Source: Selaginella moellendorffii (lineage: Eukaryota; Plantae; Lycopodiophyta). From it: a stretch of 64,000 bases of DNA. The stretch is taken from the NCBI RefSeq assembly GCF_000143415.4, contig NW_003314329.1, positions 807,763 to 871,762 on the forward strand, given 5' to 3'. The notes below the pieces were generated by a model that saw only the letters and a list, made by a program, of their open reading frames with translations, was not told the origin of the DNA and made no database searches. Positions 28,759 through 32,599 of the stretch are shown here, piece by piece. Numbering within the stretch: position 1 is the stretch's first letter; the number at the start of each line of letters is the position of its first letter. The translations under genes were made by a program, and so were the position numbers.

Positions 28759-29252
28759 ATGGTGGGAGGGAAAGGCGCCAAGGGGCTGCTATCGGCCAAG
28801 TCGGCGCTCGATCTCAAGGATTCCAAGAAGAAGCCCATGTCTCGATCTTCCAAGGCCGGTCTCCAGGTGTGTAATGATCGAAATCTGTGCCGCGAGTCCA
28901 AAATTTCGATCGATTTCTTTCTCTCACACGCGCTTGGCTGTGTTCTTCGCAGTTCCCAGTGGGGAGGATCCATCGTATGCTCAAGACGCGCGTGGCGGCC
29001 AACGGGAGAGTGGGAGCGACAGCGGCGGTCTACTCGGCAGCGATTCTAGAGTACCTCACGGCCGAGGTGCTGGAGCTGGCTGGGAATGCGAGCAAAGATC
29101 TCAAGGTGAAGCGCATCACTCCCAGGCATCTCCAGCTCGCGATTCGTGGAGACGAGGAGCTGGACGCGCTAATCAAAGGCACCATCGCGGGAGGAGGAGT
29201 CATTCCTCACATCCACAAGTCGCTCATCAACAAGACGCCCAAAAAGGAGTGA
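28759..29252 (+). CDS. H2A.Z: Histone H2A.Z variant, 2 exons (intron 28867-28952)
   Basis: SRSSKAGLQ|[61 protein letters not shown] and [12 protein letters not shown]. Confidence 0.97.
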
Positions 29253-29496
29253 AAGAAAGAAGTTTAGCGAAGAACACACGAGGTGAAGTTTGACACCCAC
29301 AGCTCATTCATACTGTTCTTCCCTTTTCCTTTTCTTTTTTCCTCTCTCGGTTCTTATTCCTGTATTGGTGGTCGATCGATCGATCCACTCCAGCTCTAGT
29401 TTTTCGGGTTCTAGGATGAATCACACTGGAAAAACAAACACAGATTTAAGCTTGAAAGAATGAAAAGGACTGACTTCTCTTTCGTCGATGATGTTT

Positions 29497-31154
29497 CTAC
29501 GCTAGCTTGAGTCTGTCAGTGGGGTAAATGAGATCCGGGTTTGATGCCAGGCCCGGATTCTTGTCCACGAGCTCCGTCCATCGCCCAGTTCCACAGGTCC
29601 GGGAGATTTTGGCCAGAGTATCACCCTCTTTGACGACATAGTAGCCGCGAGTTTTCCTGGCCAAGAACAGCAAACTTAGAGAAAGAGTCGCGAAAACTAG
29701 AAAGTTTTTGGTACCTCGGCCGCTTGACTGCTACCACTGCCAGAACACTCACGACCAGTGCCACTGCTCCAATCACCAAAGGAAGAACAAACCCAGTACT
29801 TCCATTTCGCTGCACGGAACTCGGCGGCTCTTTCTCTTTTGCCTGTGATGAAAGAGACAAAAAGAGAGATTTTAAGAAACCTCTTTCCACCTGGGAATAG
29901 TTTTTCTAGAGTACATACCTGGACGGAGCAGCATTGTTGATCCTCGACTTGCGGCGGCGCGCGATCACCACATCTCTCCTCGTCCACAAGCTCGGGATTG
30001 TTATCACCTTCGTCATCCTCAGTTTCGTCCACTTGCGATGACAATACTGAGGTCGACTGCTTATCCTCCTCATCTTGAAGCTCTGAAGATGCGGTTTCGT
30101 CCTCGAATTTTACAGGAGTCCCGCTTTCCTGCTGCTGGAGCTCTACGGGAGTCCCGCTTTCCTGCTGCTTGATCGAGGGTGGCGTTTCCATAAAGGCCGA
30201 GCCGGCGAGACTCGGAGACGATAGAACTTTGCCAATCGGCTGAGAAGTCTGCACAGCAAGCAGTCTTTTCGTTTTTATTGTAGCAAGGAAGGTGAACAGA
30301 AATCTCGTACCCGTGGAGACTTGTAGTCTGGAGAGGAGCTCGCCACCGCTGCTTGTTGCAAATGCTCTCGGATACCTCCAACTTTGTCCGTCGGTGGCAT
30401 GGGACCTGCGTGAGCTACCTTATCAAAATCTGGAACCTGAAACATCACACCACACGCTTAGCTTTCTTCCAGTTTTCTTTTCTTCTTCTCACCGGCAGAC
30501 TTTGAGCGCGAGCCTTTTTGGAGAGAGCTCGAATGCAAAAGCAGACCCTTCTGATATCCTTCTTCTCCACAACATCCGGGGGAGTGAAGAGATCGACATC
30601 GGGCAGGCCTATTCTCTTGCAAATCTGCGCAAACGCAAGTGGGAACATATATCTAGCTCGAGAAACAAAAATTGCTTGCCTTGAGGAATGAATCAACGTG
30701 AGAGTATGGGAGATATCGTCCACCCTTTGCATCGTTTGATGGTAGCTCCGAGGAAGGCCGCCTTGGAAATGCGGCATCCCCTCCAGAGCTGCTTCGTATA
30801 AGATCCTTGAACAGCTTGGAAACTCGAAACCTGGAGAGAGGCAAAAAATAAATAAATTTCTGGGAGGAGACACGTTCTTCCATTTCGGATTTTCAGATTG
30901 ACTCACAGTATGTCTCCATCGGCGAGCAAATCCGCCAAGCTCCGATCTCCACCATATCGTTCCTCCAAAAGAGCTTCTAGCCATACCTTCGCTTGCTTCT
31001 GCGAGAGCCAAAGCCAATCCATGGAAATATTTCACTCGGGGCATTCAATCGATCGACTCGAGCGACAATGTCGAGAATCTACCTGCATGAATTCGTCGTC
31101 CAGCTCCCGGAACTGGACTGGCGACATTTCGCCAGCGCCTCCCTGCTGCGCCAT
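29497..31154 (-). CDS. Calponin-homology domain - acidic linker - transmembrane helix - LysM protein, multi-exon
   Basis: CH-like AKVWLE...LLADGDIL...VDSFLKIC...DLFTPPDVVEKKDIRRVCFCIRAL, then TM FVLPLVIGAVALVVSVLAVVAV. The last exon (29497-29656; this frame is not in the ORF track) reads YVVKEGDTLAKIS...NPGLASNPDLIYPTDRLKL, a LysM. Confidence 0.82.
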
Positions 31155-31491
31155 TGCCCTCCTCCCTCCTCTTATCTCCGGGAGCCCTAAATCCAAAATC
31201 TCATAGCTCTCACTTGTTCGTCTTCTTCGCCTCTTCTTCCCTCCCCCTGACAGTGACCGTACAATGTGGCTGTTTGGATTGTGGCCCGGCCCATGCCATC
31301 GTCCCAAACTAGGTAGAACCACACAATATTCGCGAGGGCGAGGGGTTTATTTTGGCAAGAGGAAATTAATGACAGATATAGCAATGGCTAATCTTCCATA
31401 GCGAATCCCATCGCAAGCTAGATTATAGGATCGATCACGAGCTAAGCACCTTTTAAATGAAAATCTTCGTTCTTTTGTGCCGTCTTTTATT

Positions 31492-32370
31492 TTAAAAAAT
31501 TTTCAGAGTGTTCGTGGCCCAAGCAGCATAAAGGTTACCTGGGCTGGACTTAAACACATGATAAAGCACCACATTTCTATCTCTTTGCATAGTCACAAAT
31601 GCATAGCATGGTCCATCACAGAACTTATCTAGCGACCATATAACAGCCTGACTTGGGGTCTCTTTGACGACCATGTTCCCATTAAGTTCGACTGTGAGAT
31701 AGCAATCGACTCCTCCTCTCCCACACACTCCATTCGTCCAAACTTGCCCCCGGTTTGCCTCATTCAAAGACAAGCTACAATCATCCTGGAGCTTGAATGT
31801 GTAGATCAAATTCGGGGCCTGGAGCTCAAAATTTCGATGAAGACCATTGTAGAAGATGTTGTCCAGCGTTGTCAATTTTGCTTGGCAATCGCCTCGATCG
31901 CTTCCAAATAGAATCTTCGTTTGGTTGTGAAGTGTTTCCATCTGTTGATTTGGTGCTATGCGATATTGGACTCCAAACATCTCGGAGACTGCAAGCATGC
32001 TGCTAGCTAGAAAGGCTTGCATTTGACCTCTTGTATACATTACTAGGTTTTGGATTATCAGTTTGATAATAAAGCCTCTCACTCTGATGGTGTTACCTGG
32101 ATTGACATGGCAGAAATCCAGATTCGGGCCTGTATGATAAGCCAAGATGACGATGTCGATCACAACGTTATTTGTCACAATGATTTGATCAATATAAGCT
32201 CCCCCACTCTCATAGTAAGTATTGTCGTCGAAAATGCTCAGATTTTCAATCACTGCATCTAGAATCATAGTGACATCGGCTAGTGTTATAGCATTGTGCT
32301 GGTCAGAGAATTCCCAGCGCATGGCTTGAACAACACTAAAAAAGAAAAAAAGTGCTGAAATGAACTTCAT
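31492..32370 (-). CDS. Secreted protein: unknown N-terminal domain plus C-terminal bulb-type (GNA/B-type) lectin domain, intronless
   Basis: Signal peptide MKFISALFFFFSVVQA; lectin-like LQDDCSL, LNGNMVV...VIWS, MQRDRNVVLY and AAWATNT. Confidence 0.78.
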   Translation of the reverse strand: MKFISALFFFFSVVQAMRWEFSDQHNAITLADVTMILDAVIENLSIFDDNTYYESGGAYIDQIIVTNNVVIDIVILAYHTGPNLDFCHVNPGNTIRVRGFIIKLIIQNLVMYTRGQMQAFLASSMLAVSEMFGVQYRIAPNQQMETLHNQTKILFGSDRGDCQAKLTTLDNIFYNGLHRNFELQAPNLIYTFKLQDDCSLSLNEANRGQVWTNGVCGRGGVDCYLTVELNGNMVVKETPSQAVIWSLDKFCDGPCYAFVTMQRDRNVVLYHVFKSSPGNLYAAWATNTLKIF

Positions 32371-32599
32371 ATTCACAAAGATTGAATGATAATTTAAACA
32401 TATCAAGATAAATTACTAATAATAGTCAACCAATTATTAATCATGAGGAACAAGGTTCAGAAATACAAAAATAATAAATTTAAATAAAAAGGAATGGATA
32501 AAACTTAAGAATCATCATTGACTTTTTATAGACCACGCCAATAAAAACCAAACAAAAAAAGTGTGTTTTCTCTGCTCTGGATATGTCTTGTGGTCCTAT

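What the first reader, a model, noticed from the sequence alone, without database searches (positions are those of the whole stretch)
29497..31154. Calponin-homology / transmembrane / LysM protein: a possible cytoskeleton-to-glycan linker
Seen: an N-terminal CH-like domain without a signal peptide, an acidic linker, one TM helix and a C-terminal LysM whose reading frame is not in the ORF track. Known: CH domains bind actin or microtubules, LysM binds GlcNAc polymers (chitin, peptidoglycan), and some non-seed plants retain plastid peptidoglycan. Inference: a type II topology could couple the cytoskeleton to plastid peptidoglycan or extracellular chitin without any kinase domain.
Basis: partly seen in the sequence, partly recalled or inferred. 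Interest (0 to 1): 0.75.

Follow-up and report, generated by a model that had tools for sequence, protein, structure and literature searches.

The report
CH-membrane-LysM protein, ancestral OPAQUE10 form
This is a real, expressed spikemoss gene for a one-pass membrane protein with an actin-type CH domain on the cytosolic side and a sugar-binding LysM domain on the far side. It is the old, complete form of the maize OPAQUE10 family, whose LysM part decayed in flowering plants.

Summary
Window 31154..29497 (minus strand) is an 8-exon gene of Selaginella moellendorffii (SELMODRAFT_446318, 396 aa). All seven introns, including one GC-AG intron, appear as joints in transcript contigs from four studies.

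The product has four parts:
- A type-3 CH domain with no signal peptide (family profile vs GAS2 CH3, E 3.8e-12; AF2 model matches only CH folds).
- An acidic disordered linker (pI 4.2).
- One strong TM helix.
- A 50-aa C-terminal LysM (Pfam above threshold; predicted beta-alpha-alpha-beta fold).

The architecture is conserved in zygnematophyte algae, a liverwort, mosses, lycophytes, ferns and a probable gymnosperm group. The gene tree follows the species tree.

Angiosperm members are the OPAQUE10 family. They keep the CH domain, the TM helix and a tail of the same length, but the LysM has decayed to a basic stretch ending YPxEKLKF (hhalign 96%).

The cytoskeleton-to-glycan linker reading fits the anatomy, but the membrane, the ligand and actin binding are all untested. 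LysM loss parallels loss of the plastid peptidoglycan toolkit. However, that is essentially one event, and Physcomitrium, which has peptidoglycan, has a decayed LysM.

The scan reached the same reading on another piece of this genome (s1-380585).

The parts
29497..31154 (-). Coding span of the 8-exon gene SELMODRAFT_446318 (396 aa), from the start ATG at 31154 to the stop TAG at 29499-29497
   Evidence: Hand-built model. All seven introns appear as RNA contig joints in 4 runs. The product is identical to database protein P0001.
31083..31154 (-). Exon 1 (residues 1-24). It has no signal peptide and carries the start of the conserved FRELD..FLQ motif.
30907..30998 (-). Exon 2 (CH helix A region). 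It ends with 2 bases of a split Leu codon.
30680..30830 (-). Exon 3 (CH middle, including a low-confidence loop). It is followed by the GC-AG intron 30625-30679.
   Evidence: joint 30624/30680 with ends CT..GC; (pLDDT below 50 at residues 73-91)
30493..30624 (-). Exon 4 (C-terminal CH helices). This is the most conserved part of the protein.
   Evidence: Rng2, IQGAP1, GAS2 as top PDB hits; 135 homologues at E up to 0.001
30493..31112 (-). Type-3 calponin-homology domain, residues about 15-149, spanning exons 1-4 with their introns
   Evidence: Family profile A1 vs PDB: GAS2 CH3 E 3.8e-12, IQGAP1 2.2e-7. AF2 pLDDT 78.8 with the core above 90. Foldseek top hits are all CH domains.
29804..30436 (-). 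Disordered acidic linker, residues 150-314 (exon 5, exon 6 and the start of exon 7). It contains a short tandem duplication at about 30105-30170.
   Evidence: pI 4.2, 31 D+E against 13 K+R. It is not conserved in sequence or length between lineages.
29726..29803 (-). Transmembrane segment, residues 315-340 (26 uncharged residues; predicted helix 321-340)
   Evidence: KD 2.94; helix in the AF2 model; small-residue pattern AGxxAxxG conserved from algae to angiosperms
29715..29842 (-). Exon 7 (juxtamembrane region plus TM). It ends with 2 bases of a split Arg codon.
29497..29656 (-). Exon 8 (basic KRPRKTR flank, LysM, stop)
   Evidence: Joint 29656/29715 seen in all 4 runs
29503..29640 (-). LysM domain, residues 350-395
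   Evidence: Pfam PF01476 29.1 and 23.9 bits. Beta-alpha-alpha-beta in the AF2 model. Nearly all leading Foldseek hits are LysM domains at rmsd about 1-2.5 A.
31155..31284 (-). 5' UTR. The transcript end is near 31284, and a 5-codon uORF lies at 31187-31204.
   Evidence: Contigs reach 31239-31284, with adapter sequence after 31284 in X7; sequence read
29250..29496 (-). 3' UTR with an optional intron at 29426-29474. It probably overlaps the 3' end of the convergent histone H2A gene.
   Evidence: the joint appears in X1 and X7 only, and the unspliced X4 contig runs past 29250

Best explanation
This gene is the Selaginella orthologue of the OPAQUE10 family, in its ancestral and complete form. It encodes a single-pass membrane protein anchored by a TM helix near its C-terminus.

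The N-terminal type-3 CH domain and the acidic disordered linker stay in the cytosol, because there is no signal or transit peptide and the conserved domain starts at residue 15. The last 50 residues fold as a LysM domain on the non-cytosolic face, which could be a lumen, an intermembrane space or the apoplast.

The most likely working model is a trans-membrane tether.
- The CH domain holds the cytoskeleton. F-actin is the best guess, because the closest solved relatives are the actin-binding CH3 domains of GAS2 and IQGAP/Rng2.
- The flexible linker gives reach.
- The TM helix has a conserved small-residue face that may pack against a partner helix.
- The LysM fixes the far end to a GlcNAc-type glycan or a protein partner.

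Shown here: the gene structure, its expression, the two folds, the single TM, and the conservation of the architecture from zygnematophyte algae up to a probable gymnosperm group. Also shown is the decay of the LysM to a basic tail with a retained YPxEKLKF end in angiosperms.

Inferred: the topology, cytoskeleton binding and glycan binding.

Unknown: which membrane.
For: Gene and expression:
- Seven introns are confirmed as joints in contigs of 4 runs from 4 studies.
- The product equals P0001.

CH fold:
- The family profile hits GAS2 CH3 (9kbx, bound to F-actin) at E 3.8e-12, then IQGAP1, Rng2, calponin, Vav and transgelin.
- The Foldseek top 44 hits are all CH domains.
- Relatives P0011 and P0136 pass the Pfam CH threshold.
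- Of the GAS2 actin contacts named in PMC12084551, F108 aligns with a nearly invariant Tyr/Trp and R144 with an Arg/Lys conserved across the family.

LysM. The residues GDTL, IS, W, NP and the NPDLIYP-type end are conserved across about 24 diverse members.

Topology:
- There is no hydrophobic N-terminus and only one TM.
- Most relatives carry a basic cluster just before the TM.

Family:
- The same architecture occurs in Closterium, Mesotaenium, Netrium, Riccia, Sphagnum, Diphasiastrum, Adiantum and Ceratopteris, and in a Logan group that clusters with Taxus.
- A single 2745-nt transcript contig, L001, encodes CH-TM-LysM in one ORF.
- The CH-domain tree follows the species tree, with seed plants at 99/98 and angiosperms at 100/100 support.

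Angiosperm tails:
- They are 45-56 aa long, and 81 of 95 end in a YPxEKLKF-like motif.
- They are collinear with the LysM tails by hhalign (prob 96%, E 3.7e-9).
Against: - Nothing here shows binding of actin, microtubules or any glycan.
- Single CH3 domains do not all bind actin. PMC12084551 calls this controversial. GAS2 contacts T129 and E133 are not conserved here, and the N-terminal ABD1 hook could not be aligned.
- In Selaginella the basic cluster (KRPRKTR) lies after the TM rather than before it. This goes against the positive-inside rule for a cytosolic N-terminus, and across the family the two flanks differ little in charge (mean +3.1 against +2.2).
- A 56-residue folded tail is longer than in classical tail-anchored proteins, so the insertion route is unclear.
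- The only functional study of a family member, maize O10 (ER and protein bodies), is retracted.
- LysM domains at the Chlamydomonas chloroplast envelope (MIN1, EYE2) are thought to act through protein contacts (PMC3084665).
Confidence: 0.5

Rival explanations
1. Plastid reading. The protein sits in the plastid outer envelope like a tail-anchored protein, with the CH domain on cytosolic actin and the LysM in the intermembrane space gripping the plastid peptidoglycan layer. It would couple plastid position or division to the cytoskeleton. The LysM decayed when angiosperms gave up the peptidoglycan wall.
For: - LysM integrity follows the published distribution of the full Mur toolkit. It is intact in Closterium and other zygnematophytes, a liverwort, Sphagnum, lycophytes, ferns and a probable gymnosperm group. 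No LysM was detected in any angiosperm member recovered (PMC12681378; PMC13519894).
- There is a basic flank after the TM in Selaginella and Sphagnum, and an R/K/S/T-rich tail in angiosperms. From memory, this resembles the targeting signals of plastid or mitochondrial outer-membrane tail-anchored proteins.
- Design precedents at the chloroplast envelope exist: MIN1 (C2-TM-LysM) and EYE2.
- The LysM tails are mostly basic, pI about 9.
Against: - The phyletic match rests on essentially one loss event, so it is confounded with everything else that changed on the angiosperm stem.
- Physcomitrium (LysM 17.2 bits, below threshold) and Ceratodon (truncated tail) have decayed LysM domains, although P. 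patens has a demonstrated plastid wall.
- Ferns carry a second paralogue without a working LysM.
- Angiosperms still conserve the tail length and its last motif, so the tail has a role that does not need peptidoglycan.
- MIN1 and EYE2 work in an alga that, from memory, lacks peptidoglycan.
- There are no localisation data.
- The retracted O10 paper placed maize O10 at the ER.
Confidence: 0.2
2. ER or nuclear-envelope adaptor without glycan binding. As claimed for maize O10, the protein is inserted into the ER after translation. The CH-like N-terminus binds client or scaffold proteins rather than filaments. The short luminal LysM, or its remnant, is a protein-interaction or retention module.
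For: - The gene is orthologous to O10.
- The O10 paper reported ER and protein-body localisation dependent on the TM, and zein binding by the N-terminus.
- Angiosperms keep a conserved C-terminal peptide after losing the LysM fold. This fits a peptide-partner contact, as in KASH-SUN or PDV2-ARC6 pairs (from memory).
- The LysM of EYE2 and MIN1 is interpreted as a protein-contact module.
Against: - The O10 paper is retracted for unresolved figure and data problems. Its statements that O10 is cereal-specific and that its TM has an independent origin are contradicted here.
- The sugar-side signature of LysM (GDTL and the helix-1 residues) is invariant for several hundred million years in non-angiosperms, which suggests the canonical site is in use.
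- The CH core is closest to actin-binding CH3 domains.
Confidence: 0.2
3. Cell-surface glycan sensor. The protein sits in the plasma membrane with the LysM outside. It reports chitin or bacterial peptidoglycan to the cortical cytoskeleton without a kinase.
For: - LysM ectodomains are the plant receptors for chitin, peptidoglycan and Nod factors (structures among the hits).
- Fern and horsetail chitinases use single LysM modules (5ylg, 5bum).
Against: - There is no signal peptide, only one LysM instead of three, and no conserved cysteines in the tail.
- The LysM would sit only about 8 residues from the membrane, leaving little reach into a wall.
- The family is a single-copy, slowly evolving lineage that follows the species tree. 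Immune receptors behave differently.
- The tail is kept in angiosperms without the LysM.
Confidence: 0.07
4. Artefact. The model would be a chimera of two neighbouring genes, with a CH gene and a small LysM ORF wrongly joined.
For: - No single contig spans the whole mRNA.
- The LysM ORF is short (58 aa).
Against: - Contigs join exon 8 to exon 7 to exon 6, and exon 6 to exons 5 through 1. They overlap inside the uninterrupted exon 6.
- Full-length transcripts of other species encode the same architecture in one ORF.
- The architecture is conserved in more than 40 proteins.
Confidence: 0.01

Closest known systems
Maize OPAQUE10 (O10) and angiosperm 'OPAQUE10-like / CH domain-containing' proteins
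   Same: - These are orthologous. The N-terminal 160 residues are 42-49% identical over the aligned N-terminal region.
- The layout is the same: CH, variable linker, TM, then a tail of about 50 residues.
- The TM and tail are collinear by profile comparison.
- The gene tree follows the species tree.
- The O10 paper itself used a Selaginella homologue as outgroup.
   Different: - Angiosperm proteins have no LysM. Only the last motif, YPxEKLKF, survives.
- Cereal O10 has a repeat-rich middle region that is absent here.
- The published function (zein distribution in protein bodies) comes from a retracted paper. That paper named neither the CH domain nor the LysM, and it called the protein cereal-specific.
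GAS2 / IQGAP1 / Rng2 / calponin type-3 (single) CH domains
   Same: - They are the best sequence-profile and fold matches.
- Like them, this is a single CH domain preceded by a conserved N-terminal extension.
- The aromatic residue of ABD2' and the basic residue of ABD2 are conserved.
   Different: - There is no GAR, IQ, RasGAP or calponin-repeat partner domain.
- Identity is only 17-24%.
- Two of the GAS2 actin contacts are not conserved.
- P0001 itself does not reach the Pfam CH threshold.
Chlamydomonas MIN1 (C2 - TM - LysM) and EYE2 (LysM - TM - thioredoxin) of the eyespot and chloroplast envelope
   Same: The design is the same: a cytosolic peripheral-binding domain, one TM and a single LysM beyond the membrane. 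MIN1 is postulated to attach the chloroplast envelope to the plasma membrane (PMC3084665).
   Different: - The cytosolic module is a C2 (lipid/Ca) domain, not CH.
- No sequence relationship was tested here.
- A separate MIN1-type gene exists in this genome according to scan note s1-353506.
Nesprin / KASH-domain proteins of the LINC complex
   Same: The logic is the same: N-terminal CH-type actin binding, a long flexible spacer, a C-terminal TM and a short conserved peptide on the far side that anchors to a luminal partner (from memory).
   Different: - Nesprins have paired CH1-CH2 domains and spectrin repeats.
- The KASH tail ends in a PPPX motif, or VPT in plants. That motif is absent here, where tails end in LKLA or LRL-type sequences.
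- This is an analogy only.
Plant LysM receptor kinases, LYP/CEBiP and animal LYSMD3/4
   Same: All carry a LysM fold, and all are membrane-associated.
   Different: - The receptors have a signal peptide, three disulfide-linked LysM domains outside the cell, and a kinase or GPI anchor.
- From memory, LYSMD3/4 have the LysM N-terminal of the TM.
- Here there is one LysM, C-terminal of the TM, with no cysteines and no kinase.

Membership tests
Calponin-homology domain (Pfam PF00307), type 3 / single-CH class | Significant sequence match to CH profiles | tested here: met
   Family profile A1 vs PDB gives GAS2 CH3 E 3.8e-12, IQGAP1 2.2e-7 and calponin 7e-6. Orthologues P0011 (35.6 bits) and P0136 (33.3 bits) pass the Pfam cut-off of 26. 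P0001 alone and the single exons do not.
Calponin-homology domain (Pfam PF00307), type 3 / single-CH class | Four-main-helix CH fold | tested here: met
   The AF2 model has helices at 20-35, 53-69, 95-110 and 129-145 with a core pLDDT above 90. The Foldseek top 44 hits are all CH domains, led by IQGAP1, Rng2, GAS2, transgelin and calponin.
Calponin-homology domain (Pfam PF00307), type 3 / single-CH class | Binding of F-actin (or microtubules) | not testable with these tools
   Only partial conservation of GAS2 contact residues is seen. F108 aligns with Tyr/Trp and R144 with Arg/Lys. T129 and E133 are not kept, and ABD1 is not alignable.
LysM domain (Pfam PF01476 / CBM50) | Profile match above the curated threshold | tested here: met
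   29.1 bits (exon 8) and 23.9 bits (P0001) against a cut-off of 20.9.
LysM domain (Pfam PF01476 / CBM50) | Beta-alpha-alpha-beta fold | tested here: met
   The AF2 model has E50-52, H59-66, H71-77 and E93-95. Nearly all leading Foldseek hits are LysM domains at rmsd about 1-2.5 A, with E-values weak because the domain is small.
LysM domain (Pfam PF01476 / CBM50) | Binding of GlcNAc-containing glycans (chitin, peptidoglycan) | not testable with these tools
   The GDTL loop and helix-1 residues are invariant in 24 members, which is consistent with an intact site. That is all that can be said.
OPAQUE10 family | Orthology of the N-terminal domain | tested here: met
   Hits are named OPAQUE10 / opaque endosperm10, with E values from about 1e-43 to 1e-28 for the named angiosperm members. 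The tree places Selaginella where the species tree predicts, with the angiosperm O10 clade nested inside.
OPAQUE10 family | C-terminal TM followed by a conserved tail of about 50 residues | tested here: met
   Tail lengths are 45-56 in both groups. hhalign of A2 against A3 gives prob 96%, E 3.7e-9, and is collinear to the last residue.
OPAQUE10 family | Cereal-type middle repeats | tested here: not met
   The linker is not alignable outside close relatives. The repeats are described as cereal-only in PMC4991801. They define cereal O10, not the wider family.
Classical tail-anchored (TA) membrane proteins | No signal peptide and a single TM at the C-terminal end | tested here: met
Classical tail-anchored (TA) membrane proteins | Very short polar tail after the TM (about 30 residues or fewer, from memory) | tested here: not met
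   The tail is 56 residues and folds as a domain. The protein is TA-like in layout but is not a textbook TA protein.
KASH-domain proteins | C-terminal luminal peptide ending in PPPX (animals) or VPT-type (plants) | tested here: not met
   Tails end in LKLA, LRLSR or LKF-type sequences. The motif definition is from memory.
MIN1-type C2-TM-LysM proteins | N-terminal C2 domain | tested here: not met
   The N-terminal domain is CH. There is no C2 hit in Pfam.
LysM receptor kinases / LYP | Signal peptide, three LysM modules outside the cell, and a kinase or GPI anchor | tested here: not met
   There is one LysM, no signal peptide and no kinase.

The most novel reading that the evidence does not exclude
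The LysM tail lies in the plastid intermembrane space and grips the plastid peptidoglycan layer, while the CH domain holds cytosolic actin. This would be the first physical link between the relict cyanobacterial wall and the host cytoskeleton. It would be conserved from zygnematophyte algae to gymnosperms and dismantled in angiosperms, where only a short tail motif survives (OPAQUE10).
Probability: 0.17. Interest if true: 0.85.

Novelty: new variant of a known kind. Interest (0 to 1): 0.6.

Why it matters
Three things follow if the reading holds.

1. OPAQUE10 was published as a newly evolved, cereal-specific chimera in a paper that is now retracted. It is instead the worn-down end of an ancient single-copy streptophyte family. 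Its original design was CH - TM - LysM, and its TM and tail share one origin from algae to maize.

2. The CH-TM-LysM combination was not found in the literature searched. It is a compact candidate for coupling the cytoskeleton across a membrane to a glycan or partner. It joins MIN1 as a second 'cytosolic module - TM - LysM' design in green plants.

3. The LysM decays on the same branch where the plastid peptidoglycan toolkit is lost. The family therefore gives a concrete gene for asking what holds and positions the plastid wall, and it can be knocked out in Marchantia, Closterium or mosses. That link is only a correlation so far, and there is at least one awkward exception.

Tried and rejected
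- Pfam on each exon by reference found only the LysM. The CH domain is too split to score.
- Two literature searches for CH plus LysM in plants gave nothing relevant. The second returned only LysM-Cre mouse papers.
All full-length work used P0001, which the database search returned and which matches the hand model.
- The Taxus genomic locus could not be fetched to look for a missed LysM exon, because the file was too large. Whether the partial Taxus model really lacks the LysM stays open.
- The taxon of the Logan group P0012/P0188-P0191 (sample SRR8442434) could not be named. It is called 'probable gymnosperm' only because it clusters with Taxus.
- A search with P0096, a lone lineage between the zygnematophytes and land plants, found nothing beyond itself.
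- The low-identity multi-stretch hits are metagenomic or oomycete CH proteins and say nothing about the family's origin. I therefore could not decide whether Klebsormidium, Chara or hornworts have the family.
- Flank-charge analysis of the TM did not settle the topology.
- One script call returned no answer and was repeated.
- The chimeric-gene artefact reading was rejected.
Full report
**What is in the sequence**

The region is eukaryotic and lies next to a spliced histone H2A gene. On the minus strand I read an 8-exon gene by hand:
- E1 31154-31083
- E2 30998-30907
- E3 30830-30680
- E4 30624-30493
- E5 30436-30311
- E6 30248-29919
- E7 29842-29715
- E8 29656-29497

The codons at E2/E3 and E7/E8 are split. 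Intron 3 has GC-AG ends.

Every full-length analysis uses P0001, a 396-aa protein that the representative search returned with 100% identity to exon 4 at residues 106-149. Its sequence is exactly what the hand model predicts. Its source names are SELMODRAFT_446318, Selaginella moellendorffii, 'LysM domain-containing'.

**Expression and splicing**

The look-up of sequencing runs listed 20 runs of one organism that hold the stretch, 17 of them holding half or more of its sampled words. That share matches the exonic fraction of the stretch.

All seven predicted introns appear as joints in every run. They include the GC-AG intron (ends CT..GC on the plus strand) and the joint 29656/29715 that links the TM exon to the LysM exon. 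These runs are therefore RNA-derived.

Contigs break inside exon 6 at a two-allele bubble (nine differences between 29971 and 30066) and overlap there by 22-30 nt. The chain from exon 8 to exon 1 is therefore continuous, although no single contig spans it all.

Other features of the transcript:
- A 49-nt intron in the 3' UTR (29426-29474) is used in two of the four runs.
- The 5' end lies near 31284.

**The domains**

- LysM. Pfam PF01476 scores 29.1 bits on exon 8 and 23.9 bits on P0001, against a cut-off of 20.9. An AF2 model of residues 300-396, built on 24 family tails, gives a TM helix (321-340) followed by beta-alpha-alpha-beta. Its leading Foldseek hits are almost all LysM domains at about 1-2.5 A, including CtCBM50 with GlcNAc3, the T. 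thermophilus NlpC/P60 LysM, Ecp6 and MltD.
- CH. Pfam sees nothing in the single exons or in P0001. Exon 4 alone already picks Rng2, IQGAP1 and GAS2 as its best PDB matches. A profile of 22 family N-termini hits GAS2 CH3 at E 3.8e-12, followed by IQGAP1, Rng2, calponins, Vav and transgelin. The AF2 model (mean pLDDT 78.8, core above 90) has the CH helices, and its 44 best Foldseek hits are all CH domains. Orthologues P0011 and P0136 pass the Pfam CH threshold. This is a single, type-3 CH domain.
- The remainder. There is no N-terminal hydrophobic stretch, and the conserved FRELD..FLQ motif starts at residue 15, which leaves no room for a signal or transit peptide. The linker is acidic (pI 4.2). 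There is one hydrophobic segment of 26 uncharged residues (KD 2.94, next best 0.84). The tail is basic (pI 9.9).

**The family**

Exon 4 found 135 proteins at E up to 0.001. Searches with P0001 and P0012 added named relatives. Cluster look-ups gave taxa.

The architecture CH - variable linker - TM - LysM, with a tail of about 54 residues, occurs in:
- zygnematophyte algae: Closterium, Mesotaenium endlicherianum and Netrium digitus
- a liverwort: Riccia
- mosses: Sphagnum and several unnamed mosses
- lycophytes: Selaginella and Diphasiastrum
- ferns: Adiantum and Ceratopteris
- a group of 758-787-aa transcript-derived proteins, P0012 and P0188-P0191

The closest long-range match of that last group is Taxus (38% over 640 residues), and it forms a clade with Taxus (99/90). 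One of its members is encoded as a single ORF on a 2745-nt transcript contig.

The maximum-likelihood tree of the CH region follows the species tree: zygnematophytes, liverwort, mosses, lycophytes, ferns, then seed plants (99/98), with gymnosperms sister to angiosperms (100/100). The family therefore behaves as a mostly single-copy orthologue group.

**Angiosperms**

The angiosperm clade is what the databases call OPAQUE10, OPAQUE10-like or 'CH domain-containing protein'. None of the angiosperm proteins carries a Pfam LysM, and a family-specific LysM HMM finds none.

Even so, they keep a TM followed by a tail of 45-56 residues, and 81 of 95 tails end in a YPxEKLKF-like motif. That motif is the counterpart of the LIYPSERLRL end of the LysM. 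A profile-profile comparison of LysM tails (A2) with angiosperm tails (A3) is collinear from the basic juxtamembrane cluster through the TM to the last residue (prob 96%, E 3.7e-9). The angiosperm tail is a relic of the LysM.

The LysM also decayed independently in three other places:
- a second fern paralogue (Pteridium P0010, Adiantum P0013)
- Physcomitrium (17.2 bits, below threshold; GDTL has become ADTL)
- Ceratodon (truncated tail)

**What is published**

The only functional paper on the family is maize opaque10 (PLoS Genet 2016, PMC4991801). It was retracted in 2022 for unresolved figure problems and missing data (PMC9668117). It used a Selaginella homologue as outgroup, so homology of the N-terminus was known.

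That paper never mentions CH or LysM. It calls O10 cereal-specific and says the TM has an independent origin. The present data contradict the last two statements. Searches for CH plus LysM in plants found nothing relevant.

**How it probably works**

Established rules of membrane insertion put a large N-terminal domain without a signal peptide in the cytosol. They put whatever follows a single TM on the other side.

The closest solved relative of the CH domain, GAS2 CH3, binds F-actin on its own (PMC12084551). Of its named contacts:
- F108 aligns with a nearly invariant Tyr/Trp.
- R144 aligns with a conserved Arg/Lys.
- T129 and E133 are not kept.
- The N-terminal hook could not be aligned.

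The LysM keeps its GDTL loop and helix-1 residues invariant from algae to ferns. The TM keeps a small-residue face (AGxxAxxG) from algae to maize.

My best reading is a trans-membrane tether with four working parts:
- the cytoskeleton on the cytosolic side, with F-actin most likely
- a flexible acidic spacer
- a sequence-specific TM
- a glycan or partner on the far side

Architecture and conservation are shown. Topology, both binding activities and the membrane are inferred or unknown.

**The peptidoglycan idea**

Published surveys place the full Mur toolkit in streptophyte algae, bryophytes, Selaginella and conifers, and in no typical angiosperm. The algae include Closterium, where wall antibiotics block chloroplast division (PMC12681378; PMC13519894).

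Several points weigh against it:
- It is essentially one event on the angiosperm stem.
- Physcomitrium, the plant with the best evidence for a plastid wall, has a decayed LysM.
- Angiosperms still conserve the tail.
- The chloroplast-envelope LysM proteins MIN1 and EYE2 of Chlamydomonas are read as protein-contact modules (PMC3084665).

I give the plastid reading about 0.17-0.2.

**Oddities that remain**

- In Selaginella the basic cluster lies after the TM (KRPRKTR). In most relatives it lies before the TM and ends in a conserved Trp that Selaginella lacks.
- A 56-residue folded tail is long for post-translational tail-anchor insertion.

**Earlier notes of the scan**

After my own analysis, a word search showed that a follow-up on another piece of this genome had reached the same OPAQUE10 / LysM-loss reading (s1-380585). 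That piece has the same length and is presumably the other haplotype. A note on a different gene (s1-353506) pointed me to MIN1 as a design precedent, and I checked that in the literature.

**Verdict**

This is a new variant of a known kind: the ancestral, LysM-bearing form of the OPAQUE10 family and a previously undescribed CH-TM-LysM architecture. Interest is moderate to high, because it corrects the picture of O10 and offers a testable candidate link between a membrane-enclosed glycan and the cytoskeleton.

Noticed in passing
window 28800-29252 (+): A spliced histone H2A gene lies here. The last exon scores Pfam Histone 59 bits plus Histone_H2A_C, and looks H2A.Z-like by eye. It is convergent with the CH-LysM gene. 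An unspliced contig runs from 29655 past 29250, so the two 3' ends probably overlap.
   Followed up: partly
window 30625-30679 (-): Intron 3 of the gene uses a GC-AG splice pair (AAG|GCAAG). The joint is present in all four RNA runs.
   Followed up: yes
window 29426-29474 (-): An optional 49-nt intron in the 3' UTR is spliced in two runs and retained in a contig of a third.
   Followed up: partly
window 31187-31204 (-): A five-codon upstream ORF lies in the 5' UTR, 30 nt before the main ATG.
   Followed up: no
window 29971-30066 (-), exon 6: Two alleles that differ at nine positions in the acidic linker are present side by side in three of the four runs. They break the transcript contigs there.
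   Followed up: partly
window about 30105-30170 (-), exon 6: There is a short tandem duplication in the linker (QQESGTPV.. twice). This fits a fast-evolving spacer. Cereal O10 is reported to have expanded repeats in the same region.
   Followed up: no
window 31492-32406 (-): An intronless 304-aa ORF starts with a signal-peptide-like stretch and carries a QxDxNxVxY-like motif near its end. It has no Pfam hit at E 0.01. Scan note s1-422293 describes GNA-lectin fusion proteins a few kb beyond the window.
   Followed up: partly
P0010 (Pteridium), P0013 (Adiantum), P0049 (Physcomitrium), P0074 (Ceratodon): The LysM decayed or was lost independently in a second fern paralogue and in Bryopsida mosses. 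The moss case sits awkwardly with a peptidoglycan-binding role.
   Followed up: partly
P0002, P0009, P0015, P0115 (Closterium spp.): Closterium has longer family members (728-1102 aa) with two or three CH-like stretches. Some have a LysM more than 200 residues after the hydrophobic segment. This may be a lineage-specific expansion or fused gene models.
   Followed up: no
PMC4991801 / PMC9668117: The only functional paper on OPAQUE10 is retracted. Its claims that the protein is cereal-specific and that its TM has an independent origin are contradicted by the family alignment.
   Followed up: yes
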